This document shows, piece by piece, positions 23 through 56,933 of a DNA stretch of 64,000 nt. The position numbers were made by a program, and so were the translations under genes. The notes beneath the pieces are model-generated. The model was not told the origin of the DNA. It saw only the letters and a list, made by a program, of their open reading frames with translations, and did not search any database. The DNA is taken from IMG/VR virus record IMGVR_UViG_3300028920_000022, positions 394,730 to 458,729 of that record, one strand, 5' to 3'. The stretch's first letter is position 1, and each line of letters begins with the position of its first letter.

Positions 23-415
23 TTGTTTGCGTTATGGACAGATAATGAAAAATTTATATTTGGTACGTTAGTTATTAGTACGATATTAATAATGATAGCG
101 TGGATATTTCACGGGGGTGGCACGGGATATGATAATGTCGCCAGATTGTTAGCGGGAGTAGTGATTTGGGTAACTGGGCTATTGTCAATTCAAAGAAAGC
201 AGGTGGAAAACCGACTAAAGATGTTAAACGAAACATTAGAGCTTAGAGTAATGGCTAGAACCGCGGCATCAGAAGAAAAGTCTCGCCGATTAGAATTGCA
301 GATTAAAGCCCTACAAGGTATTCGACATGCTGGGACAAAGAATTCATTATCTCAATTAGATGAAATTATCCACAATTTGCAGGAAATTAGCAAACTTGAG
401 GCTTTTGATGAGTAA
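23..415 (+). CDS. Membrane protein, probably 5'-partial; 2 TM helices plus sensor-kinase-like coiled coil
   Basis: Frame is open to the window edge; hydrophobic segments followed by LNETLELRVMART coil; no kinase domain. Confidence 0.6.
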   Translation: MFALWTDNEKFIFGTLVISTILIMIAWIFHGGGTGYDNVARLLAGVVIWVTGLLSIQRKQVENRLKMLNETLELRVMARTAASEEKSRRLELQIKALQGIRHAGTKNSLSQLDEIIHNLQEISKLEAFDE

Positions 416-815
416 TAGTAGTACACCACCATATAGTAATGGAATTACTTTGAGATTTCTTGCTGATCAATTTGCGCGCGGTTTTCAAGAATTACGTGAT
501 GCTGTAAATAATATACAAACCCAGGTTCAAGCTGGTGCTATAGATATGGCAGGAGTAAAAGCTGAGATATCTAACATGCAAGACAAAGTTGATGAATTAC
601 AGGTTTTAGTGCGTGGTTCTAATGATAGCTCGCTTACTTCAAAACTTCATACAATTGAAAAAGAATTGAAACTTATTAATGAATGGGTAATCAATCAGAA
701 AGCAATAAAATCTGAAAGTAGTAAAAATAAATTAGCTATCAAGGTTGCGGTAATAACTGGTAGTTTTGCTTTGTTGGCACAAATAGTAATGCAAATTATT
801 CATTGGTTTAATTGA
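408..815 (+). CDS. Coiled-coil protein with C-terminal TM helix
   Basis: ATG at 408 overlaps the end of the previous ORF; heptad-rich middle; hydrophobic C-terminus. Confidence 0.6.
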   Translation: MSNSSTPPYSNGITLRFLADQFARGFQELRDAVNNIQTQVQAGAIDMAGVKAEISNMQDKVDELQVLVRGSNDSSLTSKLHTIEKELKLINEWVINQKAIKSESSKNKLAIKVAVITGSFALLAQIVMQIIHWFN

Positions 816-874: not shown

Positions 875-903
875 TTGACATGGGAGCTTCGTTCGGCTAG
901 CGT
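875..903 (+). promoter_or_regulatory. Sigma70-like promoter upstream of ncRNA copy 1
   Basis: TTGACA(875-880)-17 nt-TAGCGT(898-903). Confidence 0.5.
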
Positions 904-910
904 AGGTGGT

Positions 911-967
911 GTAACGCGAGGTTGATCTTTCATCTGCATTTTGTGGGTCTTCCGATTATTTCGTTAC
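911..967 (+). ncRNA. Structured ncRNA motif, copy 1 (unknown family)
   Basis: GTAACG/CGTTAC outer stem, GGTTGATC/GGTCTTCC inner stem, conserved GATCTTTCATC. Confidence 0.6.
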
Positions 968-977
968 ATTTTCTTTT

Positions 978-1055
978 TGTGCATGGTGAGACTTGAACTT
1001 ACAAATCCTCGGAAGATAGCGGTTTTTTAGACCGCCGTGTTTTCGCCATGTACAC
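978..1055 (-). pseudogene. Degenerate tRNA-Leu(TAA)
   Basis: GCGGT-CTAAAAA-ACCGC anticodon arm, long variable arm, GTTCAAGT T-loop; D-loop largely deleted, acceptor and T stems mismatched. Confidence 0.6.
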
Positions 1056-1067
1056 ATTTCCAAACAC

Positions 1068-1241
1068 ATGATTTCTCAACACATGATTTCTCAACTAAAA
1101 CACTGGGGTTATTTTTCACTAGGAACAACGTTATTTTTGATACCATTTATTTTAATGCTAAGACCACCGTGGTATCTTAATGCGATGATGATGGTTGGTT
1201 TGGTAATGGTAATCCAAAGTACTAAGGTTGGAGAGAAGTAA
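1068..1241 (+). CDS. Small membrane protein (57 aa; not in ORF track)
   Basis: MISQHMISQLKHWGYFSLGTTLFLIPFILML...; two hydrophobic stretches; 15-bp tandem duplication at the start. Confidence 0.5.
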   Translation: MISQHMISQLKHWGYFSLGTTLFLIPFILMLRPPWYLNAMMMVGLVMVIQSTKVGEK

Positions 1242-1270
1242 TTTCTACGCATATTTAGGATTCAGATTTG

Positions 1271-1331
1271 GGACGCGAGATTAGATCTTTCATCATTCAT
1301 AGATATTTCGGGTCTAGTCGTTTTTTCGTCC
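1271..1331 (+). ncRNA. Structured ncRNA motif, copy 2
   Basis: GGACG/CGTCC and GATTAGATC/GGTCTAGTC stems, compensatory relative to copies 1 and 3. Confidence 0.6.
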
Positions 1332-1425
1332 ATTTTGCGTTGTTCGTCTAAGTTAAGACATCCTTGTTAGAGCTTCTAAGCTATTACACAGGAAGATAGA
1401 GTATCGAATCTCTGCGACGCGCTAG

Positions 1426-1489
1426 GTAACGCGAAGTTAGATCTTTCATCATTTTCCAAGGTAAACGGGTCTAACTGTTTTTTCGTTAC
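1426..1489 (+). ncRNA. Structured ncRNA motif, copy 3
   Basis: GTAACG/CGTTAC and AGTTAGATC/GGTCTAACT stems, conserved TTTCATC loop. Confidence 0.6.
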
Positions 1490-1560
1490 ACTAATTTGAC
1501 CCCTTTAAGACCATAAAAGGTTTGTTTTCGAAATACATTTAGACACAACATATCTTTTTA

Positions 1561-1592
1561 AAAGGCATGCCCTTTAAGGGTGTGCTTTTTTT
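1561..1592 (+). terminator. Rho-independent terminator
   Basis: AAGGCATGCCCT-TTA-AGGGTGTGCTTT hairpin followed by a T-run. Confidence 0.7.
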
Positions 1593-1596
1593 GTAT

Positions 1597-1682
1597 TGCG
1601 GGAATGTAGCAAAGGCGGCTAGCCAGTCTCATAAGCTGGCGTCCATTGATCGCGAAGGGTTCGATTCCCTCTCCCGCAACCA
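1597..1682 (+). tRNA. tRNA-Met(CAT) with enlarged variable region and encoded CCA
   Basis: TGCGGGA/TCCCGCA acceptor, CCAGT-CTCATAA-GCTGG anticodon arm, GGTTCGATTCC T-arm, ACCA end. Confidence 0.85.
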
Positions 1683-1739: not shown

Positions 1740-3146
1740 ATGGGAAAATTGAAGGTGTGGAAAGTTGGCGCAGCTGGAGAACCCAGTTTTCCTGCCAATT
1801 TTGAGGTGGCTAAAAAAGCCGTTCTCCAAGTTACAGATATTAAAACAAATCGTAATAAGTATTATGCCATAGAACTACACTCTGCTGGCAATAAATATAG
1901 AGTGTTTACTCATTATGGTCGAACAGATGATCTGGACACGAATCCTAATGCTGGGGTGCGCGAGGTTCGTTACGGCAACTTGTCTGAATGTGAAGCAACC
2001 TATCATCAGATATATAGTCAAAAAACTAGCGCAAGAAAAGGATATAAGGAACTTAGCTTAGCATCTTCGCGTATTGGTTCGTCTCAATCGGTTGGTAAAT
2101 CTAGCGGACATGTTGATGACAAAACGCTTGAAAAACTAAACAACGGTAACAAGAAAGTGATAAAAAACAAAGTTTCTACACTTTCTCCCGTTGTACAAGA
2201 TTTTGTTTCTTATATTTATGCTGAAGCCACTAATGCCCTAACTAGCACAATTAATGCCAGCATTACCGCTAATGGTATCGAAACGCCTCTTGGTGTTTTG
2301 ACACTGGGTCAGATTGATAAGGGGCAAAAGATTTTGGATGAGCTTTATGATTTATTCAATTCAAAAAAGAGCCAATCAATACGTGACCATATGGTAGAAC
2401 TGAGTGGTGAGTTTTATACAGTAATTCCTCACAGAATAGGCAGAACTAGGGCTGCTGTAGAAGCTGCTGTTATTGATAGTTTAGTAGATTTTAATGCTAA
2501 GCAAGACACATTACAACTTATGCGAGACATGTTAAGTGTTTCGGGTAAAGACTCCCAGGTACTTATTAACCCTGAAATTGATAAGAAATATAATGCTTTG
2601 GGTTGCGAAATTAAAACTGTAGATAATAAAAAGTATCAAGAATTGAAGGATTATGTAGAGAAATCACAAATAAAAACCAGAAATATTAAAGTAAAGAATA
2701 TATATTCATTATGCAGACCAGAAGAACAAAAGGTTTTTGCTGATAATATTTCAAATAAACGATTACTTTTTCACGGTTCTAGGGCAAAAAACTGGGTAGG
2801 TATTCTTTCCCGTGGTTTGTTGCTTCCTAAGATTGTGGTTAGCTTGGGTGTAAACCGAACTGACGCAGGTTGGCTTGGAAATGGTATTTATTTCGGAGAT
2901 GCTGTTTGCACTACATTATACTACACGTCTCCTGGAAGGCAGAGAAACACCCGGATGATGGCGATAGCGAATGTAGCATTAGGAAAGATGAAGGATTTTA
3001 ATAGAATTACGTATGGATTAAAAGGACCACCCGCTGGATATCATAGTTGTCATGGTGTACGTGGAACCTCATTTGCAGATGATGAATATGTAATTTATGA
3101 CCAGAAACAGCAGAAACTTGAGTATTTAGTGGAGTATGTGTCATGA
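1740..3146 (+). CDS. Poly(ADP-ribose) polymerase-family protein (WGR + regulatory + catalytic domains)
   Basis: WGR-like NKYY.IELH...HYGR; helical regulatory domain (FYTVIPH); catalytic LLFHGS, GNGIYF, DEYVIYD (H-Y-E). Confidence 0.9.
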   Translation: MGKLKVWKVGAAGEPSFPANFEVAKKAVLQVTDIKTNRNKYYAIELHSAGNKYRVFTHYGRTDDLDTNPNAGVREVRYGNLSECEATYHQIYSQKTSARKGYKELSLASSRIGSSQSVGKSSGHVDDKTLEKLNNGNKKVIKNKVSTLSPVVQDFVSYIYAEATNALTSTINASITANGIETPLGVLTLGQIDKGQKILDELYDLFNSKKSQSIRDHMVELSGEFYTVIPHRIGRTRAAVEAAVIDSLVDFNAKQDTLQLMRDMLSVSGKDSQVLINPEIDKKYNALGCEIKTVDNKKYQELKDYVEKSQIKTRNIKVKNIYSLCRPEEQKVFADNISNKRLLFHGSRAKNWVGILSRGLLLPKIVVSLGVNRTDAGWLGNGIYFGDAVCTTLYYTSPGRQRNTRMMAIANVALGKMKDFNRITYGLKGPPAGYHSCHGVRGTSFADDEYVIYDQKQQKLEYLVEYVS

Positions 3147-6134: not shown

Positions 6135-7277
6135 ATGATTAAATCTATGTTTGATGATGATCTTTACAAGTTCACAATGCAACAGATTATTTTGCATTTC
6201 TATGGAGACAAGAAAGCCGAATATAGATTTAAAAATCGTGGGAACACCAAGTTTAATGACAAGTTTGCTGATAGACTTCAGGATGAGATAGAGAACCTTT
6301 CTCTGTTGGTTCCCGACAAATATGAACTAGAAGAGTTTGCGAAGATTCCGTTTATTAGAGGAGATTATGTAGAGTACTTATCAAGGTATCGTTATGATCC
6401 ACGGCAGGTACAGTTTTCTTTGCGAGATGGAGATTTAGATCTTCGTATAAAGGGTCCATGGCATTCCGCTATATTGTGGGAAGTCAAACTGATGGCGCTA
6501 ATTAGTGAGATTTATTTTGCCCAACATAAAGCTACCTGGACAATGGATGGTCAAAAAGAAAAGCTTGATCGAAAAGCTCTTCTTTTAGAGGCGGTAGATG
6601 CTAAGTATGCCGATTTTGGTACTCGTCGCAGGCGTAGTTTTGAGGTTCAAGATTTGGTGGTAAGAAACCTTGTCAACAAACATGGGTTCCTGGGTACATC
6701 AAATGTACATTTAGCCATTAAACATGGTGTTTCCGCCGTGGGCACTATGGCTCACGAATGGGTTCAGGGTGTATCGGTAGCTGAGGATTTATTGCATGCT
6801 AATGGTATTATGATGGACAGATGGAATTCTTTTTATCAGGGACAGTTGGGTGTTGCTTTAACTGATACATTTACCACTCCGCACTTTTTATACAACAGTT
6901 TTGATGCCAAGCGCGCTGCTGCATTTTCTGGAGTTAGACAAGATTCGGGCGATCCGTTTTGGTTTGCGAATCAGGTGATAAATCGATACCTACAACTAGG
7001 AATTAACCCCAAAACCAAAACCATTATTTTTAGCGATAGTTTAGATGCCAAAACTGCCGCCAAACTACAGATCCATTGTGATGGAAAGATTAACTGTGCT
7101 TTTGGCATTGGCACCAATCTAACTAATGATTTTGACAATTTGAAACCAATTAATATGGTGATCAAGTTGTGGTCAATTGACGGAATTCCGGTAGTAAAGT
7201 TGTCAGATAATGCTGGCAAAAACAATGGCGATCTATGGATGCTTGGGGTTGCGAAGAGGGTGTTTGGGGTATCATGA
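6135..7277 (+). CDS. pncB: Nicotinate phosphoribosyltransferase
   Basis: DDDLYKFTMQQ, ADFGTRRR, GTSNV, GTMAHEW, ALTDTF, GVRQDSGDP, IIFSDSL, FGIGTNLT, VKLSD..GK motifs. Confidence 0.95.
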   Translation: MIKSMFDDDLYKFTMQQIILHFYGDKKAEYRFKNRGNTKFNDKFADRLQDEIENLSLLVPDKYELEEFAKIPFIRGDYVEYLSRYRYDPRQVQFSLRDGDLDLRIKGPWHSAILWEVKLMALISEIYFAQHKATWTMDGQKEKLDRKALLLEAVDAKYADFGTRRRRSFEVQDLVVRNLVNKHGFLGTSNVHLAIKHGVSAVGTMAHEWVQGVSVAEDLLHANGIMMDRWNSFYQGQLGVALTDTFTTPHFLYNSFDAKRAAAFSGVRQDSGDPFWFANQVINRYLQLGINPKTKTIIFSDSLDAKTAAKLQIHCDGKINCAFGIGTNLTNDFDNLKPINMVIKLWSIDGIPVVKLSDNAGKNNGDLWMLGVAKRVFGVS

Positions 7278-34433: not shown

Positions 34434-35483
34434 TTATACCTCAAACAACGGACATGTTCTACAAGAAAACGAATTGCTTTCCCTGGTTTTTAATAAACTA
34501 TTACGGAATGCAACCATTCTTTCGTGGTTCCACACATCTTCAATAAATGAATTGCAGGAGACTACGTCCATTCCCCGCGCCCACTCTACACAACCCTCGG
34601 CAAAAGAGCAAGGAAAAGCTTCACCCTTCCAGTTGATAAATATGGAAAACAATGAACTCTCGCAAGGCTCCACATACTCAGCTATCTTGTCAAAATCTTT
34701 ATGGTTTTTAATTGTGTTCAAGAATTTGAAAGCGGAACAACTATCGAAACCAAGCCCAACATTATTTGAAGTAGCTTGGTAAACCAAGTAAGCAAACTTG
34801 TTTTGTGACAGTTTGTGATAATGTTTCCCTCGCCCCTTTTGCTTTAAAGATAGCATAACAATAGCTTTTACAGGATCCAAACGAGAATCTTTTACCTTGT
34901 CTCTAATGGTTTCCCGAGTAAGATTAAATGTTTCCTCACTGATCATACAATGAATGTTAATTTGTTGCAACCCATGTTTGTGCAATTTTTGAATAGAATC
35001 GTAGCAAATATTTTTATTTTCGTAACGGCTGACAGCAACAGCCCCACAAACTTCTGCTAGTTTTGCTGCAGTTTCGTCTGAAATATCGGCAACGGTGATG
35101 TTTGGTATAACCCCATTGTTTCGACAATACCACATCATATCGAAAAGTTCGGGGTTTGATGTGGCATTACTATCCGCACCAAAAGCAATTTGCGTTAGTA
35201 TTCGGTTTTCTGTAATTTTGTCGAAAACTTTTTTAAAGGTATCCAGGGACATGTTGTTGCCAACCGGAGTATTAGATTTGTAGCAATGTTTACAAACCTT
35301 TCCACCTACACCTTTACATATGGTGGTTACTTCGATGTCAGCAATCTCGGGAGACGGCGACATCTCCGGGTCTTCTTTTTTAGAGCTGCCCCAACGAATA
35401 AAATATCCAGAACCTTTATGGAACCGGTAATTATAATTAGGAGAGCGAACTGTTTTATGGTGTTTGCTTTCAGTAATTTTCAT
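34434..35483 (-). CDS. Radical SAM enzyme with SPASM/twitch-like C-terminus
   Basis: CKGVGGKVCKHCY (CX7CX2C), PCESSLFS.FINWKGEAFPCSF, CRTC. Confidence 0.85.
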   Translation of the reverse strand: MKITESKHHKTVRSPNYNYRFHKGSGYFIRWGSSKKEDPEMSPSPEIADIEVTTICKGVGGKVCKHCYKSNTPVGNNMSLDTFKKVFDKITENRILTQIAFGADSNATSNPELFDMMWYCRNNGVIPNITVADISDETAAKLAEVCGAVAVSRYENKNICYDSIQKLHKHGLQQINIHCMISEETFNLTRETIRDKVKDSRLDPVKAIVMLSLKQKGRGKHYHKLSQNKFAYLVYQATSNNVGLGFDSCSAFKFLNTIKNHKDFDKIAEYVEPCESSLFSIFINWKGEAFPCSFAEGCVEWARGMDVVSCNSFIEDVWNHERMVAFRNSLLKTRESNSFSCRTCPLFEV

Positions 35484-38400
35484 CCATTGCGTACCCTTCG
35501 GAGATATTGCGCCAAGTTTTCATTAGGTTTCGGCGCGTAATCTCCAAGGTACTCTAGCTTTTCTTCCATGTCAACACCAATAATTTTTCCAAAATTTTCC
35601 AGCTCTTTCTTTGCGTTTCCCCACAAAGCATTCTTATTTTTGAGGAACCAAACCAGCGCTATTTCTTCAATATTTTTACCATTAAATCTGGCATCCGGAT
35701 TCAGAATATAGGTAGAAAAGAATATTTCCATAGCCTCAGCAAATTCGTTTTCTCGTTCTTGGTAAGCTATATTGCGTGCCATTCCTTTTGGAATATTGGC
35801 AACCATTTCTTTATATTCTTCTGGCAATTGGTATACATTTTTTGCAATCAGTCGTAAAGCGGTTCCTATAGGCATCCATTTTGTTTTATCTTGTTCGAAA
35901 AGTCCGCTCATTTCTGCTGGGTTAATTTGTCCTATTTCTTTTCCTTGCAGCTGAATTCCCTTAATATTTTTGATATTAATTGGTCTGTGAACAACGCCCT
36001 GATTTTCTCCCAAATCGTTCATTTCGCCTTTTTCGTTATGTCTGGTGTCGTCTGGGTCAATCTCTATCCAATTGAGCGGAATTGCCATTTCCAGTACCAC
36101 TGGATCTCCGCCATCTTCTTTCGCGGTGTGATTAGCATAGAGCCAGGCGCCTGTAAAGCCTTCCAGCTGACGGGTGACGTAGATACCTGGGCTTACTGAT
36201 TCCCAATTAACGTAATTTTCGGCAATAGAGGGGTCCAGGGAGCCATGTTGAACAATAAGTGCCAATTTCTTAGACGAGGTACCGTGGTAAACAATTACCT
36301 TGTGTTTTCCAGCAGCCTCTCTAAATTCGGGATCGTGTAAACTTCGGACTCTACCCAGCTCTAGTGGCAAAGCCCTCTTAGAAAAAGCCAGGGACTGTTT
36401 CAATAAATTATGTCGTATAAATGCCTTTATTGTTGTATCAGTTTCTTTTTTCAACATTTCTTTAAGGTTATTATTATCAAGCTTTGTGGCAATTTTAATT
36501 CTTTCTTTTTTGTCTTTTTTAGATATTAATTTAACCAAAGGGTCTTTGGTGTCATTGGTATCTTCCTCGTCTTCATCTTCTCCGCAGCCACATTCTTCAC
36601 AATGTTCAGTTTCGCATGGGCAATCTTCACAATGACATCCACAGTTTAGACAATCATCGAAGCCACATCCACAATTTGGACATTCTTCAGTTTCGCAAGT
36701 GCAGTCTTCACAATGGCAGCCACAATTTTCACAGTTATCATAGCCACATCCACAATCTGGACACTGTTCTGTTTCGCAAGTACAATCTGGACAATGACAT
36801 CCACAGTTAGGACATGGGTCTAATCCACAACCACACTCTTCACATTGCTCTTCATCGCAATTACAATCCTCACAATGACATCCACAATTTTCACAGTTAT
36901 CAAACCCACATCCACAATTTGGACATTCTTCAGTCTCGCAAGTGCAGTCTTCACAGTCACACTCGCAATGTGGACAAATGGCTTCAGGTTTTATTCTCAT
37001 ACGAACGGCTCTAAACTTAGCATAAAGCTTGGCATATTCATTGCCTACCATCTTGTCTTTTATGATATTTAATACTGAATATTGAGCTTTATGGTTTAGA
37101 ATTTCATTACCCAGCATTTTACGTAGATATTGGTAATCAATTCTTTTTGCAACAGCTCCGCGAACATCTACTGAAGGATCATCCATGAGTAATGTTAAAT
37201 ATTTTTTATCTACTCTTTGGGCCACAGCATAACGCACCAGTTGGGTATCCCATATGGGGCTATCAATGAGAAGGTGTAAACTTTTCTCTGGCAAGCGTTG
37301 AGCCAGCTTTCCTAAAGCATCCAAGTTTTTAATATTTTTTGTCAAGATTTGTGGGAGATATTTTTCCAGCAGCTCGGGTTTTGTTTTCATAAACAACTGC
37401 CCCATTGCCATATATTCAATTGGTCCCAAGTCTTGCCTATTCAATAATTCTTCAAATACATTAGAAGTATCTTTCATTTTATGTAATGCAGCAGACACTG
37501 TGTCTAAATTATCACTTTTGACCATTGCTTCCAAATCTGATTCGTCAGCAACCTGTTGAACAAAAAGCTGTTGCACTCTAAAATTATTGTCATGCATCAT
37601 AAAAGACTTAAGTACTTTATGATATTTTTTAGCTATATTTTTGTCGTAAACCAGTTTACTATATGCTGATAAACGTACATTTTCATCTTCCGATCTCACA
37701 AAATGGAAAGCTTCAAGTATTGGTAGGCGATTAATGGCTGCTTGTTGTGCGTTTGGTGTTGTGTTTTTTAATAAATCTATATGATCTTGCAGATCCTGGT
37801 AGTTCATTGACGTAGCTGCATAATATTGATTTGACGGATCGTCAGAAGACAGATGTTCAACTCGCCTCATACGCTCTCGTAACACCTCTAATACTCGTGG
37901 GTTTTTTTCCGTCTTCATCATTAAAGATATTTGGTTGTAAGGTATTCGTTGTGCTACGGAATCTCGTACAGTTTCGGACTGGTCTTTCACCATTAATATC
38001 AAACGATCTCTGGGTATTTTTTGTGCTACTATGTTGCGAACACCAACGCTGGGATCTTTCATCATTTCAGGTAGATATTTTTCATCTATAGTGTTAGCTA
38101 TTTGAACTCGTATAGGCTCAAATTCATCATGAATAAATTTAGGCAAATATTTTTTATCCACTTGTTTGATGGCAGCGTATCTTGCGTTATCATTAGTGCT
38201 TTCAAGTAGTCTTACCCAAGGAATTTTACTATATATAACCTGTGTTACAGCAAGATCTATATCTCCATTTTTGCGATCAAGAATTTTGTTTAAATACTCT
38301 TCAGAATATTCCTCATAACGATGGTTATCTATATAAGCAACAACCACATCATCATCCGGGTCGTTTTTTAATGTTGTTAGTTTTTCTTTCAACTCTTGTG

Positions 38401-40663
38401 TTTGAGCAGGAACGTTTTGTGCTATCCACATGCGGATTTTAGTGATTGGACTTGTGGATAGCTTTACTAATATATCTACGGTTTCTTCATTGTATCCATA
38501 TACATTCGTAAGAGTTTTTAGGGCGTATATCCTGGTATCAACATTCATGTTTTCATCAGTGGATATTTGGTGTAGCTCTTCTTCTGAAGCATGAGAGAGA
38601 GCCTCTCCTTTAATATACAGATAACCTTCTGACAAACTATCATCGTGTAGTATTAATTTTAGAATTTCTGAATCTATATCGCTACGCAACGCAATTGCTG
38701 CTTTTATTTTATCGGTACCATTTAGATACATTTCTTTAAGGTACTTTGCGTCTATTCTTTTTGCTACAATTCTTCGAACATCTTCATCTGGATGATCTTT
38801 GAAAGGAACCACCTTATCTTCTGGAACATATACCAAAGCCGTTAAAACCACAGAAACGCTTGGGTCATTAAGCAGTTTTACACATATTTCTGGAGGAGCC
38901 ACACTTGCCAACTCTGCCCTTACACTTGGGTTTGGATCATTCAACATTCCTGCTAGAACTGCCACATCCCCGTTAGCAGCCAAAACTTTTACAGCTTCCT
39001 TGCGCACACGAGTGCTTTTCATAAATTTAGCTAATTGGTGAGGATATTTTCTTACAACATCACTTAAAAACACTTCAGATGAATAATTTTCTTCGTTAAT
39101 ATTTGTTTTATTATAAAGAGCCTCCATGTACGCTAGTATAGTGTTTTCATTGGCGTTTGCGTTCAAAAACTCTCTGAAGGGTATCAGGTTATAGGTGCGT
39201 GCAGCCGTCCACACTTCTTCCGGTACTGATTGTGATATTATTTTTTTACTTTGTTCTAATAGCGTATTTCTATATGATTCATTTATATGTGGATTTTGGG
39301 CGGCAGCGATAACTACTGGATAATCTCTAATGTGTCGTTTTAAAACCCTATAAAACAAATCCCCATCATATCGCTTGATAAGTTCGGCAAGAACAGATAT
39401 ACTGGAATCATTATACATGGTTTCGATAATGTCCATATCAGCTCGCTGTGCCACCTCTAGGCGTACTTTTTCCGATGGATCATCTACCAACAACCCCAGA
39501 TCTCTGGATAAAAGACGTTTTGCTATAAATAACCGTTCAGCTGGAGTGGCTTCTTCTGTAATTAAATGAATTAAATGTTCTTTTTTAGTTTTTTTATATT
39601 TACCTAAGTCTATAGGTCCAGTGGATTCTGTTAATAATTCTTTTAATTCATTTTCAACTTTATATACGGGTTTTTTTGTTTTAGGATTAATTCCTTCCCA
39701 TTTTGGTTTTTCTCTATAAGGGTTTTTGATAATATCGATCACATCTATGGCATTTGTTCCAAAGTAGGCGCCCTGATAAGGTTCGTTGGTATGTATTGTT
39801 CCGGTTCCTGGATCATGTACCCCAGAATAGCCCAAACTGGTAAGAATACGTCTAAACAAAAACTTATTCTCAATATTCAATCCCAGCTTTCCAACCGAAT
39901 TATGAACAAACCTTACAATATAAAATAATTGTGACGCAACCGTGGCTACATTTCTAGAACCTTCGCTTTTATTATACAACTTGTCAACAATTTTATTTAT
40001 TTGGTTGGGGACCTTAGAGGTATCATCTCCCAGATATTTTTGTTTTAATTGATGTAATTCGTTTTGAAGTTTGTATTCTGATTGATTAGCTTTTACTAAC
40101 TCCAAAGACGCTTGGGACATACCTTCTTTATCGTCTTTTTCTTCAAAACTTCTGTAACGTTCAGCAAAACCAGCCTTCTCTTCTTGTATTTTTTGTAATC
40201 TAATTTCTGCTTCTTCTATTTCTTTCTTTCGTTTTTGTTGAGTGCCTAAAACATAAGGCACAAGTATGTTTTTTATTTTTTCTACATCTCTTTCTAGATC
40301 GCCCTCGTTATACTTGCCAACGTCTAAAACAGTTTCGGGATTTCTGGCTTTAAATATAATAACACCAGGGCTATCAGCTTTAAAACGAATAATTTTTCTA
40401 GTACCATTAATAAAGTCTTCAACGGTTTTTTCTATAATAGGAAAACCATAAATTCCTACAGGAGTATCATAATGAGATTGTAGATATAATCCCCAAATGA
40501 GTTTTTTATCTTGATTTCGGTTTGCCCAAGGATTTACGGTTTCAGAAAAATGCAAATAATGATAGGGTTTAACATAATTCTTGATAATTCCCACCGCAGG
40601 AGGAATGTGGATATCCTCTTTTATATGCCTACGTTTCGCTTGTTTATAACTCATTTGTCCCAT
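35480..40663 (-). CDS. 1727-aa mosaic protein: ART-like N domain, HEAT/LRV repeats, Cys-rich repeats, ART-like C domain
   Basis: YLHF..PVGIYG..GYSG..D.G.G.IH..EP.Q; many D....VR..VA.R repeats; CxCxxC array; VYHGTS...GIYVT...VVLE. Confidence 0.8.
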   Translation of the reverse strand: MGQMSYKQAKRRHIKEDIHIPPAVGIIKNYVKPYHYLHFSETVNPWANRNQDKKLIWGLYLQSHYDTPVGIYGFPIIEKTVEDFINGTRKIIRFKADSPGVIIFKARNPETVLDVGKYNEGDLERDVEKIKNILVPYVLGTQQKRKKEIEEAEIRLQKIQEEKAGFAERYRSFEEKDDKEGMSQASLELVKANQSEYKLQNELHQLKQKYLGDDTSKVPNQINKIVDKLYNKSEGSRNVATVASQLFYIVRFVHNSVGKLGLNIENKFLFRRILTSLGYSGVHDPGTGTIHTNEPYQGAYFGTNAIDVIDIIKNPYREKPKWEGINPKTKKPVYKVENELKELLTESTGPIDLGKYKKTKKEHLIHLITEEATPAERLFIAKRLLSRDLGLLVDDPSEKVRLEVAQRADMDIIETMYNDSSISVLAELIKRYDGDLFYRVLKRHIRDYPVVIAAAQNPHINESYRNTLLEQSKKIISQSVPEEVWTAARTYNLIPFREFLNANANENTILAYMEALYNKTNINEENYSSEVFLSDVVRKYPHQLAKFMKSTRVRKEAVKVLAANGDVAVLAGMLNDPNPSVRAELASVAPPEICVKLLNDPSVSVVLTALVYVPEDKVVPFKDHPDEDVRRIVAKRIDAKYLKEMYLNGTDKIKAAIALRSDIDSEILKLILHDDSLSEGYLYIKGEALSHASEEELHQISTDENMNVDTRIYALKTLTNVYGYNEETVDILVKLSTSPITKIRMWIAQNVPAQTQELKEKLTTLKNDPDDDVVVAYIDNHRYEEYSEEYLNKILDRKNGDIDLAVTQVIYSKIPWVRLLESTNDNARYAAIKQVDKKYLPKFIHDEFEPIRVQIANTIDEKYLPEMMKDPSVGVRNIVAQKIPRDRLILMVKDQSETVRDSVAQRIPYNQISLMMKTEKNPRVLEVLRERMRRVEHLSSDDPSNQYYAATSMNYQDLQDHIDLLKNTTPNAQQAAINRLPILEAFHFVRSEDENVRLSAYSKLVYDKNIAKKYHKVLKSFMMHDNNFRVQQLFVQQVADESDLEAMVKSDNLDTVSAALHKMKDTSNVFEELLNRQDLGPIEYMAMGQLFMKTKPELLEKYLPQILTKNIKNLDALGKLAQRLPEKSLHLLIDSPIWDTQLVRYAVAQRVDKKYLTLLMDDPSVDVRGAVAKRIDYQYLRKMLGNEILNHKAQYSVLNIIKDKMVGNEYAKLYAKFRAVRMRIKPEAICPHCECDCEDCTCETEECPNCGCGFDNCENCGCHCEDCNCDEEQCEECGCGLDPCPNCGCHCPDCTCETEQCPDCGCGYDNCENCGCHCEDCTCETEECPNCGCGFDDCLNCGCHCEDCPCETEHCEECGCGEDEDEEDTNDTKDPLVKLISKKDKKERIKIATKLDNNNLKEMLKKETDTTIKAFIRHNLLKQSLAFSKRALPLELGRVRSLHDPEFREAAGKHKVIVYHGTSSKKLALIVQHGSLDPSIAENYVNWESVSPGIYVTRQLEGFTGAWLYANHTAKEDGGDPVVLEMAIPLNWIEIDPDDTRHNEKGEMNDLGENQGVVHRPINIKNIKGIQLQGKEIGQINPAEMSGLFEQDKTKWMPIGTALRLIAKNVYQLPEEYKEMVANIPKGMARNIAYQERENEFAEAMEIFFSTYILNPDARFNGKNIEEIALVWFLKNKNALWGNAKKELENFGKIIGVDMEEKLEYLGDYAPKPNENLAQYLRRVRNG
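36585..36980 (-). repeat. About five ~81-bp Cys-rich units inside the giant ORF
   Basis: CHCEDCTCETEECPNCGCGFDNCENCG-type unit repeated with variation. Confidence 0.8.
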
Positions 40664-56833: not shown

Positions 56834-56860
56834 AACGATAAATGGACAAAAATTAGTAGG

Positions 56861-56933
56861 CGGGTCCTGCGAGATTTGAACTCGCGTCTAAAAGCTTTAA
56901 AGGCTTTCGCTCTCGCCGCTGAGCTAAGGACCC
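56861..56933 (-). tRNA. Ochre suppressor tRNA (anticodon TTA), Lys-like body
   Basis: GGGTCCT/AGGACCC acceptor, GCTC/GAGC D-stem, AAAGC-CTTTAAA-GCTTT anticodon arm, GCGAG-TTCAAAT-CTCGC T-arm, G73. Confidence 0.92.

What the first reader, a model, noticed from the sequence alone, without database searches (positions are those of the whole stretch)
911..1489. Three dispersed copies of a ~60-nt structured RNA with compensatory base changes upstream of the PARP
The outer stem switches GTAAC/GTTAC to GGAC/GTCC. The inner stem switches GATTAG/CTAGTC to AGTTAG/CTAACT. A single-stranded GATCTTTCATC core is invariant. G-U pairs favour the + strand; copy 1 follows a TTGACA-17-TAGCGT promoter and a terminator closes the cluster. 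The end-paired stem with pyrimidine-rich loop is Y-RNA/vault-RNA-like in outline only. The UUUCAUC loop is complementary to GAUGAAA (Met-Lys start context). Could be a protein sponge, antitoxin mimic or PARP cofactor.
Basis: partly seen in the sequence, partly recalled or inferred. Interest (0 to 1): 0.75.

Follow-up and report, generated by a model that had tools for sequence, protein, structure and literature searches.

The report
Phage Y RNAs beside a Ro60 gene

Summary
Three + strand hairpins lie at 911-967, 1271-1331 and 1426-1489, with compensatory changes in both stems and an invariant core. They follow a conserved sigma-70-like promoter, and a terminator closes the cluster.

They belong to a family I found in at least 11 phage contigs. 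47 aligned copies pair at 94.7%, and 13 of 15 pairs show double changes. The signature is NNNACG-CG...NNNGAUC-NUUCAUC...GGUCNNN...UUUCGUNNN, and it has no Rfam match.

Relatives carry 0-122 nt in the apical loop. This is often a permuted tRNA-like domain that hits Rfam YrlA below threshold. Many copies sit flush between tRNA genes in phage tRNA arrays.

The decisive finding is a 538-aa gene ending 665 nt before the window. It is a divergent Ro60/Rsr: the PDB profile hits only Ro60 (E=1e-14), and all 13 top fold matches are Ro60. In seven lineages, including three fetched as an independent test, an array of these RNAs lies 0.3-1.6 kb downstream of that gene on the same strand.

The best reading is that they are hairpin-type Y RNAs (YrlB/Yrn2-like) of a phage Ro60. 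Co-occurrence does not support the PARP-cofactor idea, and no target enrichment supports the start-codon-antisense idea. Binding and transcription remain untested.

The parts
875..903 (+). Sigma-70-like promoter of the array: TTGACA 875-880, 17-nt spacer, TAGCGT 898-903. The -10 box ends 7 nt before the first hairpin.
   Evidence: Read from the sequence. CTTGACA-N17-TAnnGT is invariant in the window, L143, L144 and L145 while the upstream sequence has diverged.
911..967 (+). Hairpin RNA copy 1. P1 is 911-916/962-967. P2 is 920-927/946-953 and has a 2x2 U/U mismatch. TTTCATC is at 928-934.
   Evidence: R1 72.2 bits, R2 60.4 bits; alignment.
978..1055 (-). Weak tRNA-like sequence on the opposite strand, between copies 1 and 2.
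   Evidence: Rfam tRNA 20.9 bits, below the gathering score. ARAGORN does not call it.
1068..1241 (+). 57-aa ORF between copies 1 and 2. L143 and L145 carry an extra hairpin copy at this position instead.
   Evidence: The stretch is conserved at about 95% in other sediment and marsh runs. Whether it codes for protein was not tested.
1249..1269 (+). Conserved box GCATATTTAGGATTCAGATTT directly before copy 2.
   Evidence: The same box precedes the homologous copy in L143, L144 and L145. Its function is unknown; it could be an internal promoter or a processing site.
1271..1331 (+). Hairpin RNA copy 2. P1 is GGACG 1271-1275 / CGTCC 1327-1331.
   Evidence: R1 85 bits, R2 74.1 bits. The minimum-free-energy fold equals the model structure.
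1337..1424 (+). tRNA-like cloverleaf with a 7-bp acceptor stem, a D arm, a T arm with UAUCGAAU, and a closed hairpin in place of an anticodon loop. Its 3' end abuts copy 3.
   Evidence: The minimum-free-energy fold is a cloverleaf. Homologues sit at the same place in L143, L144 and L145, with 3' NCCA followed directly by P1. ARAGORN does not call it.
1426..1489 (+). Hairpin RNA copy 3. P1 is 1426-1431/1484-1489. It is the only window copy with CGAA in the 5' bulge.
   Evidence: R1 87.6 bits, R2 79.4 bits.
1560..1597 (+). Intrinsic-terminator-like hairpin plus T run that closes the array.
   Evidence: Terminator-like hairpins occur at the same place in L144, L145 and L166.
1597..1682 (+). tRNA-Met(CAU)-like gene with a 16-nt variable arm.
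   Evidence: ARAGORN. Rfam gives only tRNA-Sec at 26.8 bits. The counterpart is conserved in L144 at 1698-1788.
1740..3146 (+). PARP (WGR + regulatory + catalytic domains). It is a neighbour, not shown to be a partner.
   Evidence: Pfam PF00644 1e-30, PF02877, PF05406. Co-occurrence test.
23..815 (+). Two small overlapping ORFs (130 and 151 aa) between the Ro60 gene and the array. The Ro60 gene itself lies outside the window at genome 392448-394064 (+), ending 665 nt before window base 1.
   Evidence: The same ORFs precede the array in L143 and L144. For the Ro60 gene.

Best explanation
The three elements are small non-coding RNAs of the Y-RNA kind. They are the hairpin type, with 5' and 3' ends paired into a bulged stem and a small pyrimidine-rich loop, like YrlB or Yrn2. 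They belong to a phage-encoded Ro60/Rsr protein whose gene lies 1.6-2.2 kb upstream on the same strand, just outside the window.

Shown here:
- They form a covarying, strand-specific RNA structure.
- They are a family with invariant unpaired nucleotides: ACG-CG in the 5' bulge, UUU-CGU in the 3' bulge, the closing pairs GAUC/GGUC with U.G, and UUCAUC at the start of the loop.
- They have a conserved promoter and a terminator.
- In seven lineages they sit directly downstream of a Ro60 ortholog.

Inferred:
- The array is transcribed as one precursor.
- The interspersed tRNA-like cloverleaves are cut by host RNase P and 3'-end enzymes, which frees the hairpins. In relatives, real tRNA genes flush on both sides would play this role.
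- The conserved bulged stem binds the outer face of the Ro60 ring.
- The loop, or in relatives the tRNA-like domain, recruits a second factor.
- By analogy with Deinococcus, Salmonella and Thermus phage phiLo, the RNP gates Ro60's cavity. It may tether Ro60 to host PNPase, so that structured, damaged or host RNAs are degraded or phage tRNAs are surveyed during infection.
For: Structure. 47 copies pair at 94.7%; 13 of 15 pairs have changes on both sides, in 119 cells. The covariation score is 0.458, against 0.083 or less for slid partners, and 0 of 500 shuffles reach it. The first 15 copies gave the same picture.

Ro60 identity of the neighbouring gene:
- phmmer against PDB: D. radiodurans Rsr 1.1e-9, RO60 2.4e-6.
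- A profile of four orthologs hits only Ro60 family chains: 2NVO 1.3e-14 over residues 33-489, 9NEN 8.6e-12, 1YVP 7e-6.
- Pfam vWA_Ro60 is above its cut-off in the G004 ortholog.
- The AF2 model's 13 best PDB matches are all Ro60/Rsr, including phage phiLo Ro60, at TM 0.53-0.68. The next hits have TM about 0.1.
- An invariant DxSxS motif is present.
- 92 close homologues exist, several named 60 kDa SS-A/Ro by JGI.

Linkage. The arrays lie 0.3-1.6 kb downstream on the same strand in G000, L144, G002, G003 and G004. They also do so in three new loci fetched through Ro60 homologues only: L379, L380 and L383. Within the related huge-phage clade, G010 has 51 tRNAs but neither Ro60 nor any element.

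Link to known Y RNAs. Long relatives carry a T arm, a closed acceptor stem and a D arm in YrlA order, and hit RF02553 at 31-42 bits.

Literature:
- Y RNAs lie within 4 kb of Ro60 on the same strand. [quoted passage not shown] They can be co-transcribed and cut by RNase P (PMC4201824).
- Phage phiLo Ro60 binds two adjacent Y-like RNAs and host PNPase (PMC12135203).
Against: - No binding or expression data exist. No RNA run was listed, and the complex predictor does not handle RNA.
- The published Ro-binding motif (GNCGAAN0-1G, or CGAA) is not conserved here. Only CG is invariant at that position, and CGAA occurs in copy 3 and few other copies.
- The Pfam TROVE model does not reach its cut-off on the protein.
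- Phage G001 (169 kb, complete) has 11 copies in its tRNA array but no Ro60-like gene. The RNA can therefore persist without a phage Ro60, through a host Rsr or through another function.
- Three Ro60-homologue loci (L381, L384, L385), plus G008 and G009, show no intact copy.
Confidence: 0.72

Rival explanations
1. Ro60-independent punctuation of tRNA arrays. The module would be a spacer that insulates neighbouring tRNAs from misfolding, or the recognition site of a processing nuclease. The window copies would then be a leftover mini-array around tRNA-like genes.
For: In G001, 8 of 11 copies are flush with an upstream tRNA, 10 of 11 with a downstream tRNA, and 7 with both. The linkers are only 3-6 nt. 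G001 has no Ro60 gene. In the window clade the hairpins alternate with tRNA-like cloverleaves.
Against: Stand-alone units with their own promoter and terminator and no tRNA exist (L166 3887-4075). The unpaired nucleotides are invariant across phages whose PARP and Ro60 proteins are only 24-60% identical. G010 has 51 tRNAs and no copy. The arrays co-localise with Ro60 in seven lineages.
Confidence: 0.14
2. Trans-acting antisense small RNAs whose UUCAUC loop pairs with GAUGAA at start codons.
For: The loop motif is invariant and single-stranded in the model. Multi-copy sRNA families with one seed are known (general knowledge).
Against: The 6-nt seed is too short to specify targets. Complementary 11-mers in the genome are near the control count: 7 with one mismatch, against 1-3 for the reversed pattern, and none exact. 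In long relatives the motif is partly paired within a variable arm next to a tRNA-like domain.
Confidence: 0.05
3. Cofactor or activator of the adjacent WGR-PARP. For example, a 5'-phosphorylated hairpin end might be sensed by the WGR domain.
For: The array ends 250 nt before the PARP gene in the window, L144 and L145. G002, G003 and G004 also encode a PARP 5-13 kb from an array.
Against: G001 has 11 copies and no PARP. Six other PARP-encoding records, with PARPs 24-81% identical and one record 91% complete, have no copy; a type-II tRNA sits upstream of the PARP gene instead.
Confidence: 0.04
4. A new self-cleaving ribozyme that trims tRNA 3' ends, in the manner of theta (HDV-like) ribozymes.
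For: The elements start 3-4 nt after tRNA 3' ends and have conserved unpaired nucleotides. Theta ribozymes sit next to phage tRNAs (PMC10879173).
Against: No ribozyme family in Rfam matches at E up to 10. The fold is a simple nested hairpin without the double pseudoknot. The first position is not conserved. Stand-alone copies start at a promoter, where nothing needs cleaving.
Confidence: 0.03
5. DNA-level or trivial repeats: terminators or attenuators, MITE-like mobile elements, or protein-binding sites on DNA.
For: A U run follows the inner hairpin, and the ends are inverted repeats.
Against: Compensatory changes keep the pairing rather than the sequence of the 'inverted repeats'. The invariant U.G pair is strand-specific. 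The elements are always co-oriented with tRNAs. The loops of 11-122 nt are far from terminator geometry, and the U run is enclosed by P1.
Confidence: 0.02

Closest known systems
Bacterial and phage Y RNAs of the hairpin type (S. Typhimurium and M. smegmatis YrlB, D. radiodurans Yrn2; Chen et al. 2014, PMC4201824)
   Same: They are encoded within 4 kb of a Ro60 ortholog on the same strand. They occur in several copies per locus. The 5' and 3' ends pair into a long bulged stem, and the loop is small and pyrimidine-rich. They are co-transcribed with a tRNA-like partner and processed from one precursor.
   Different: The conserved nucleotides differ: ACG-CG / UUU-CGU / GAUC.GGUC / UUCAUC instead of GNCGAAN0-1G. 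The arrays lie downstream rather than upstream of the gene. Binding to Ro60 is untested.
YrlA (Rfam RF02553), the tRNA-mimicking Y RNA
   Same: Long relatives of the window copies have the same architecture. A terminal stem with two internal loops carries a T arm, a closed acceptor-like stem and a D arm in the same permuted order. They hit the model at 31-42 bits.
   Different: All hits are below the gathering score of 69 bits, and the score comes from the tRNA-like part. The window copies lack that domain and give no hit at all. In the window clade the tRNA-like part is a separate cloverleaf in normal order.
Thermus phage phiLo Ro60 with Yrl1 and Yrl2 (PMC12135203; PDB 9KOP, 9L5Y)
   Same: A phage-encoded Ro60 has two or more adjacent Y-like RNAs. 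The model of the window phage's protein matches 9KOP and 9L5Y at TM 0.55-0.68. phiLo provides a precedent for hijacking host PNPase.
   Different: phiLo is a small thermophilic phage, and its Yrls lie upstream and carry CGAA. Here the phage is 459 kb. The RNA family is multiplied to about 10 copies per genome in relatives and is embedded in tRNA arrays.
MHV68 TMERs and MALAT1-mascRNA: tRNA-like punctuation that releases a neighbouring small RNA (from general knowledge, not tested here)
   Same: tRNA-like cloverleaves, or real tRNAs, abut structured hairpins, so tRNA-processing enzymes would define the hairpin ends.
   Different: Those systems are eukaryotic or herpesviral, with different downstream machinery. 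This is an analogy of mechanism only.

Membership tests
Y RNA (Ro60-associated non-coding RNA) | Encoded close to a Ro60 ortholog (within 4 kb) on the same DNA strand (PMC4201824) | tested here: met
   The Ro60 gene ends at genome 394064 and the copies lie at 395640-396218, same strand. The same arrangement holds in L144, G002, G003, G004, L379, L380 and L383.
Y RNA (Ro60-associated non-coding RNA) | 5' and 3' ends pair into a long stem interrupted by an internal bulge, with a variable apical module | tested here: met
   P1 has 6 bp, the bulge is 3-4 nt by 5-7 nt, and P2 has 7-9 bp. 13 of 15 pairs covary. The apical insert is 6-122 nt.
Y RNA (Ro60-associated non-coding RNA) | Conserved Ro-binding motif on the 5' strand (GGUCCGA in animals; GNCGAAN0-1G or CGAA in bacteria and phiLo) | tested here: inconclusive
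   An invariant ACG-CG sits at the same place, at the top of the terminal stem running into the 5' bulge. The full motif is absent: CGAA occurs in copy 3 and only a few of the 47 copies.
Y RNA (Ro60-associated non-coding RNA) | Physical association with Ro60, and dependence on Ro60 for stable accumulation | not testable with these tools
   Complex prediction gives no verdict for RNA. No RNA run was listed.
Rfam YrlA (RF02553) | Score at or above the gathering score of 69 bits | tested here: not met
   There is no hit in the window or the whole genome at E up to 1-10. Long relatives score 31.3-42.3 bits.
Rfam YrlA (RF02553) | Apical tRNA-like domain: T arm, closed acceptor-like stem, D arm | tested here: not met
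   The window copies have 11-18-nt loops only. The domain is present in about 10 relatives. In the window it appears as a separate cloverleaf at 1337-1424.
Ro60 / Rsr protein (for the neighbouring gene) | HEAT-repeat ring plus C-terminal vWA domain with a MIDAS motif; full-length similarity to solved Ro60 structures | tested here: met
   Profile against PDB: 2NVO 1.3e-14 over 33-489, and only Ro60 chains are hit. The 13 top Foldseek hits are all Ro60, TM 0.53-0.68. PF25045 is matched. DxSxS is invariant.
Ro60 / Rsr protein (for the neighbouring gene) | Pfam TROVE (PF05731) at its curated cut-off | tested here: not met
   The best hit is E=0.045 at 13.4 bits against a cut-off of 23. Genome-wide searches with the family found nothing. 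The ring part is too divergent for this model.
Theta / HDV-like self-cleaving ribozymes next to phage tRNAs | Nested double pseudoknot with a catalytic C in J4/2; match to HDV-type models | tested here: not met
   No Rfam ribozyme match. The covarying structure is a plain nested hairpin.
Intrinsic terminator | G+C-rich stem, loop of 3-8 nt, free U run at the 3' end | tested here: not met
   The scan does not call the copies. The loops are 11-122 nt, and the U run is enclosed by P1.
Type III antitoxin RNA (ToxI-like) | Tandem near-identical short repeats directly before an endoribonuclease toxin gene | tested here: not met
   The copies are 156-360 nt apart and about 75% alike, with other genes between them. 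The downstream gene is a PARP.

The most novel reading that the evidence does not exclude
The bulged-stem module is a portable tag that huge phages insert between tRNA genes. The host's own tRNA-processing enzymes would then release a dozen Y-type RNAs in step with phage tRNA production. These RNAs would load phage or host Ro60, and through it PNPase, to protect or proofread phage tRNAs, or to divert host RNA surveillance and nuclease-dependent defences. On this reading the family would also work without a phage Ro60 (as in G001), and the tRNA-like and hairpin modules would be shuffled as separate parts.
Probability: 0.25. Interest if true: 0.75.

Novelty: new variant of a known kind. Interest (0 to 1): 0.55.

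Why it matters
Ro60-Y RNA particles are conserved from bacteria to humans, but their role in phages is barely explored. One structural study exists (phiLo, 2025), plus bioinformatic hits in mycobacteriophages.

This locus defines a Y-type RNA family that current Rfam models miss, together with a Ro60 clade that the Pfam TROVE model misses. That clade has at least 92 metagenomic homologues, on contigs up to 454 kb.

The family shows three features not described in the papers I could search:
- about ten copies per genome;
- insertion flush between tRNA genes in phage tRNA arrays;
- a modular split into hairpin and tRNA-like parts.

The invariant nucleotides give a ready set of mutations for testing how a divergent Ro60 recognises its RNA. 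The gene neighbourhood holds an RNase T-like exonuclease, a P-loop kinase, a CCA-adding enzyme, a metallo-beta-lactamase, NAPRTase and PARP. This points to an RNA-repair and NAD island worth testing against tRNA-targeting defences.

Tried and rejected
- Rfam at gathering and E-value thresholds gave no family for the copies.
- The phage database gave no blastn match for 800-1750.
- The first loose pattern in IMG/VR gave only chance hits of 14-24 bits. Two stricter patterns gave nothing real.
- The PARP protein alone found no relatives in IMG/VR.
None of its first 120 matches passed a structural filter or R2, so this scan was not exhaustive.
- Searches with TROVE PF05731, RtcB PF01139 and YrlA RF02553 on the phage genome were all negative. 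The TROVE negative was misleading, because the Ro60 gene surfaced only through proteome comparison.
- I considered hammerhead, HDV and hatchet readings, anticodon-loop mimicry (CUUUCAU against tRNA-Glu CUUUCAC), a K-turn, and an RNase III site. I dropped them because the required positions are not conserved across the 47 copies.
- The PARP co-occurrence idea was tested and rejected.
- Complex prediction on Ro60 plus copy 3 was not folded and is not evidence.
- The search for related loci with the Ro60 alignment in IMG/VR returned only records already held.
- No RNA sequencing run was listed.
- Literature searches found no description of this motif or of Y RNAs inside phage tRNA arrays. The library is incomplete, so this is not proof of novelty.
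Full report
WHERE THE WINDOW LIES. The window is the last 64 kb of a 458,729-bp IMG/VR virus record (CheckV 100% complete) from a marine sediment metagenome. Strain-level relatives occur in other sediment, marsh and wetland runs. In those relatives, the listed changes within copies 2 and 3 fall in the variable part of the loop: 1300, 1308 and 1457-1460.

THE OBSERVATION. The three copies are at 911-967, 1271-1331 and 1426-1489 on the + strand. The core GATCTTTCATC is identical in all three. The + strand folds into the proposed nested hairpin at -14 to -17 kcal/mol (z -2 to -3), while the - strand does not. A covariance model of the three copies (R1) scores them at 72-88 bits and finds nothing else in the genome. 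A fourth exact core at 38053 lies in a long ORF without the stems. The promoter (TTGACA 875-880, 17 nt, TAGCGT 898-903) ends 7 nt before copy 1. A terminator-like hairpin sits at 1560-1590. Rfam gives no match.

A FAMILY, NOT A LOCAL REPEAT. A metagenome scan for the conserved single-stranded parts found three diverged loci, L143, L144 and L145, each with four copies. In L144 and L145 the array is followed by a PARP 80-82% identical to the window's, and in L144 by the same odd tRNA-Met as well. The promoter CTTGACA-N17-TAnnGT is invariant in all four loci while the flanks have diverged.

A broader pattern then found four large IMG/VR phage contigs, G001 to G004 (169-336 kb), with many copies. 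The 47 aligned copies give this consensus: NNN-ACG | CG-N2-4 | NNN-GAUC | N-UUCAUC | 6-122 nt | GGUC-NNN | N3-6-UUU | CGU-NNN.

Pairing is kept in 94.7% of cells. 13 of 15 pairs show changes on both sides, in 119 cells. The covariation score is 0.458, against 0.083 or less when partners are slid, and no shuffle of 500 reaches it. The U.G pair in GAUC/GGUC is kept in 41 of 47 copies, and the copies always share the orientation of nearby tRNAs. Both facts argue for an RNA read from this strand.

CONTEXT IN RELATIVES.
- In G001 to G004 most copies sit flush between tRNA genes. An example is tRNA-Glu | element | tRNA-Arg in L146, with 3-6-nt linkers.
- By ARAGORN plus a regex proxy, G001 has 40 tRNAs and 11 copies, 7 of them flush on both sides. 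G002 has 36 tRNAs and 9 copies, G003 has 31 and 11, and G004 has 38 and 10. The related phage G010 has 51 tRNAs and no copy.
- About ten long copies carry, in the apical loop, a small hairpin, a T arm (GGUUCGAAUCC type), a closed 7-8-bp acceptor-like stem and a D arm. This is the permuted order of YrlA. Four of them hit Rfam YrlA at 31-42 bits, E 4e-6 to 5e-3, below the gathering score of 69.
- L166 holds a stand-alone pair with a -10-like box and a terminator and no tRNA.
- In the window clade the hairpins alternate with separate cloverleaves that have a closed hairpin where the anticodon loop should be. In L143-L145 their NCCA 3' end (GCUA plus one G in the window) runs straight into P1 of the next hairpin (window 1337-1424).

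THE PARTNER GENE. Direct searches with Pfam TROVE were negative. A proteome comparison of G000 against G001-G004 and G010 singled out a 538-aa protein at genome 392448-394064 (+), which ends 665 nt before window base 1. It has orthologs 56-60% identical in G002, G003 and G004, far higher than the 24-31% of their PARPs, and it is absent from G001 and G010.

It is a divergent Ro60/Rsr on these grounds:
- Pfam vWA_Ro60: 2.5e-14 for the G004 ortholog and 0.0018 for the window phage's own.
- phmmer against PDB: D. radiodurans Rsr 1.1e-9 and RO60 2.4e-6.
- A profile of the four orthologs hits only Ro60 chains: 2NVO 1.3e-14 over residues 33-489, 9NEN 8.6e-12, 1YVP 7e-6.
- An invariant DxSxS MIDAS-type motif is present.
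- The AlphaFold model (pLDDT 69, pTM 0.62) has a helical-repeat N-terminal part and an alpha/beta C-terminal part.
- The model's 13 best PDB matches are all Ro60/Rsr, including Thermus phage phiLo Ro60, at TM 0.53-0.68. The next matches have TM about 0.1.
- 92 close homologues exist in metagenomes, on contigs up to 454 kb, and several are named 60 kDa SS-A/Ro by JGI.

LINKAGE TEST. In G000, L144 (ortholog 81% identical), G002, G003 and G004, a stand-alone array lies 0.7-1.6 kb downstream of this gene on the same strand. As an independent test I fetched seven loci through Ro60 homologues alone, at 42-65% identity, and scanned them with R2.
- L379, L380 and L383, the new lineages, each have two copies 0.3-1.4 kb downstream on the same strand.
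- L382 also has copies, but it comes from the same sample as G002.
- L381, L384 and L385 have none.
- G009 has the gene but only a decayed remnant downstream.
- G008 has a more distant Ro60 and no copy.
- No canonical YrlA lies near any of these genes.

This meets the criterion used to define bacterial and phage Y RNAs: within 4 kb of Ro60 on the same strand. [quoted passage not shown] A phage Ro60 that binds two adjacent Y-like RNAs and host PNPase has been shown experimentally for phiLo (PMC12135203).

WHAT IS NOT SUPPORTED.
- PARP cofactor. G001 has 11 copies and no PARP. Six further PARP-encoding records, with PARPs 24-81% identical and one record 91% complete, have no copy. A type-II tRNA sits upstream of the PARP gene there instead.
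- Start-codon antisense. No enrichment of complementary sites was seen.
- Ribozyme, terminator, MITE and antitoxin readings fail on structure or context (see the membership table).

REMAINING DOUBTS. Transcription and binding are untested. The published CGAA-type motif is not conserved here; only ACG-CG is invariant at that position. G001 carries the RNA without a phage Ro60. The family may therefore use a host Rsr, or it may have a Ro-independent role in tRNA arrays.

MECHANISM PROPOSED. Shown: a promoter-to-terminator unit of three covarying hairpins plus a tRNA-like cloverleaf, downstream of a Ro60 gene. Inferred:
- The unit is transcribed as one precursor.
- The ends are set by the transcription start for copy 1 and by RNase P and 3' processing at the tRNA-like element.
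- The bulged stem binds Ro60.
- The loop, or in relatives the tRNA-like domain, engages a second factor.
- The RNP gates Ro60 or tethers it to host PNPase for RNA surveillance or takeover during infection.

NEIGHBOURHOOD. Upstream of the Ro60 gene lie IMPDH, an RNase T-like exonuclease and an APS-kinase/AAA_33 P-loop kinase. Downstream lie the tRNA-Met-like gene, PARP and NAPRTase. Homologous loci add a CCA-adding enzyme and a metallo-beta-lactamase. Together these look like an RNA-repair and NAD island.

VERDICT. It is best filed as a new variant of a known kind: phage Ro60 with Y RNAs. Confidence is 0.72 and interest is moderate.

Noticed in passing
genome 392448-394064 (+), 665-2281 nt before window base 1 (L369:4448-6064): A divergent Ro60/Rsr gene that the Pfam TROVE model misses. 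It has at least 92 metagenomic homologues on contigs up to 454 kb, so many phage Ro60 genes may be unannotated.
   Followed up: yes
window 56859-56933 (-): A tRNA with anticodon TTA, a UAA suppressor, scoring 71.5 bits on the Rfam tRNA model. This may mean stop-codon recoding or suppression in this phage. The ORFs in the window look intact under code 11.
   Followed up: no
window 1597-1682 (+); L144 1698-1788 (-): A tRNA-Met(CAU)-like gene with a 16-nt variable arm sits directly before the PARP promoter and is conserved in L144. Distant PARP loci (L291, L294) have a type-II tRNA at the same place, so a tRNA upstream of PARP is a recurrent arrangement.
   Followed up: partly
window 978-1055 (-): A weak tRNA-like sequence on the opposite strand inside the array (Rfam tRNA 20.9 bits). 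It has a long variable region and an odd anticodon loop.
   Followed up: no
window 1068-1241 (+): A 57-aa ORF occupies the place where L143 and L145 have a fourth hairpin copy. The stretch is about 95% conserved in other runs, but whether it codes for protein is unknown.
   Followed up: no
window 1249-1269 (+): The box GCATATTTAGGATTCAGATTT precedes copy 2 and is conserved at the same place in L143, L144 and L145. It could be an internal promoter or a processing signal.
   Followed up: no
G001 (IMGVR_UViG_3300035208_002255, 169 kb), e.g. L146 898-8547 (-): A complete phage with inverted terminal repeats and 40 tRNAs has 11 copies of the module, 7 of them flush between two tRNAs. It has no Ro60-like gene and no PARP.
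   Followed up: partly
L373 3890-4030 (G009, downstream of its Ro60 gene): Only the 3' half of a module is recognisable (GTCTGTTAAATTTCGTTAC). It looks like a decayed copy. The record is 49% complete.
   Followed up: partly
L369 900-4410; L379-L384; window 6135-7277: The gene neighbourhood around the Ro60 gene recurs: RNase T-like exonuclease, AAA_33/APS-kinase-like P-loop kinase, metallo-beta-lactamase, CCA-adding enzyme, IMPDH, Thy1, NAPRTase and PARP. It suggests an RNA-repair and NAD island.
   Followed up: partly
window 38053-38063 (+): An exact GATCTTTCATC lies inside the 1727-aa ORF (35480-40663, - strand). It has no flanking stems and is a chance occurrence.
   Followed up: yes
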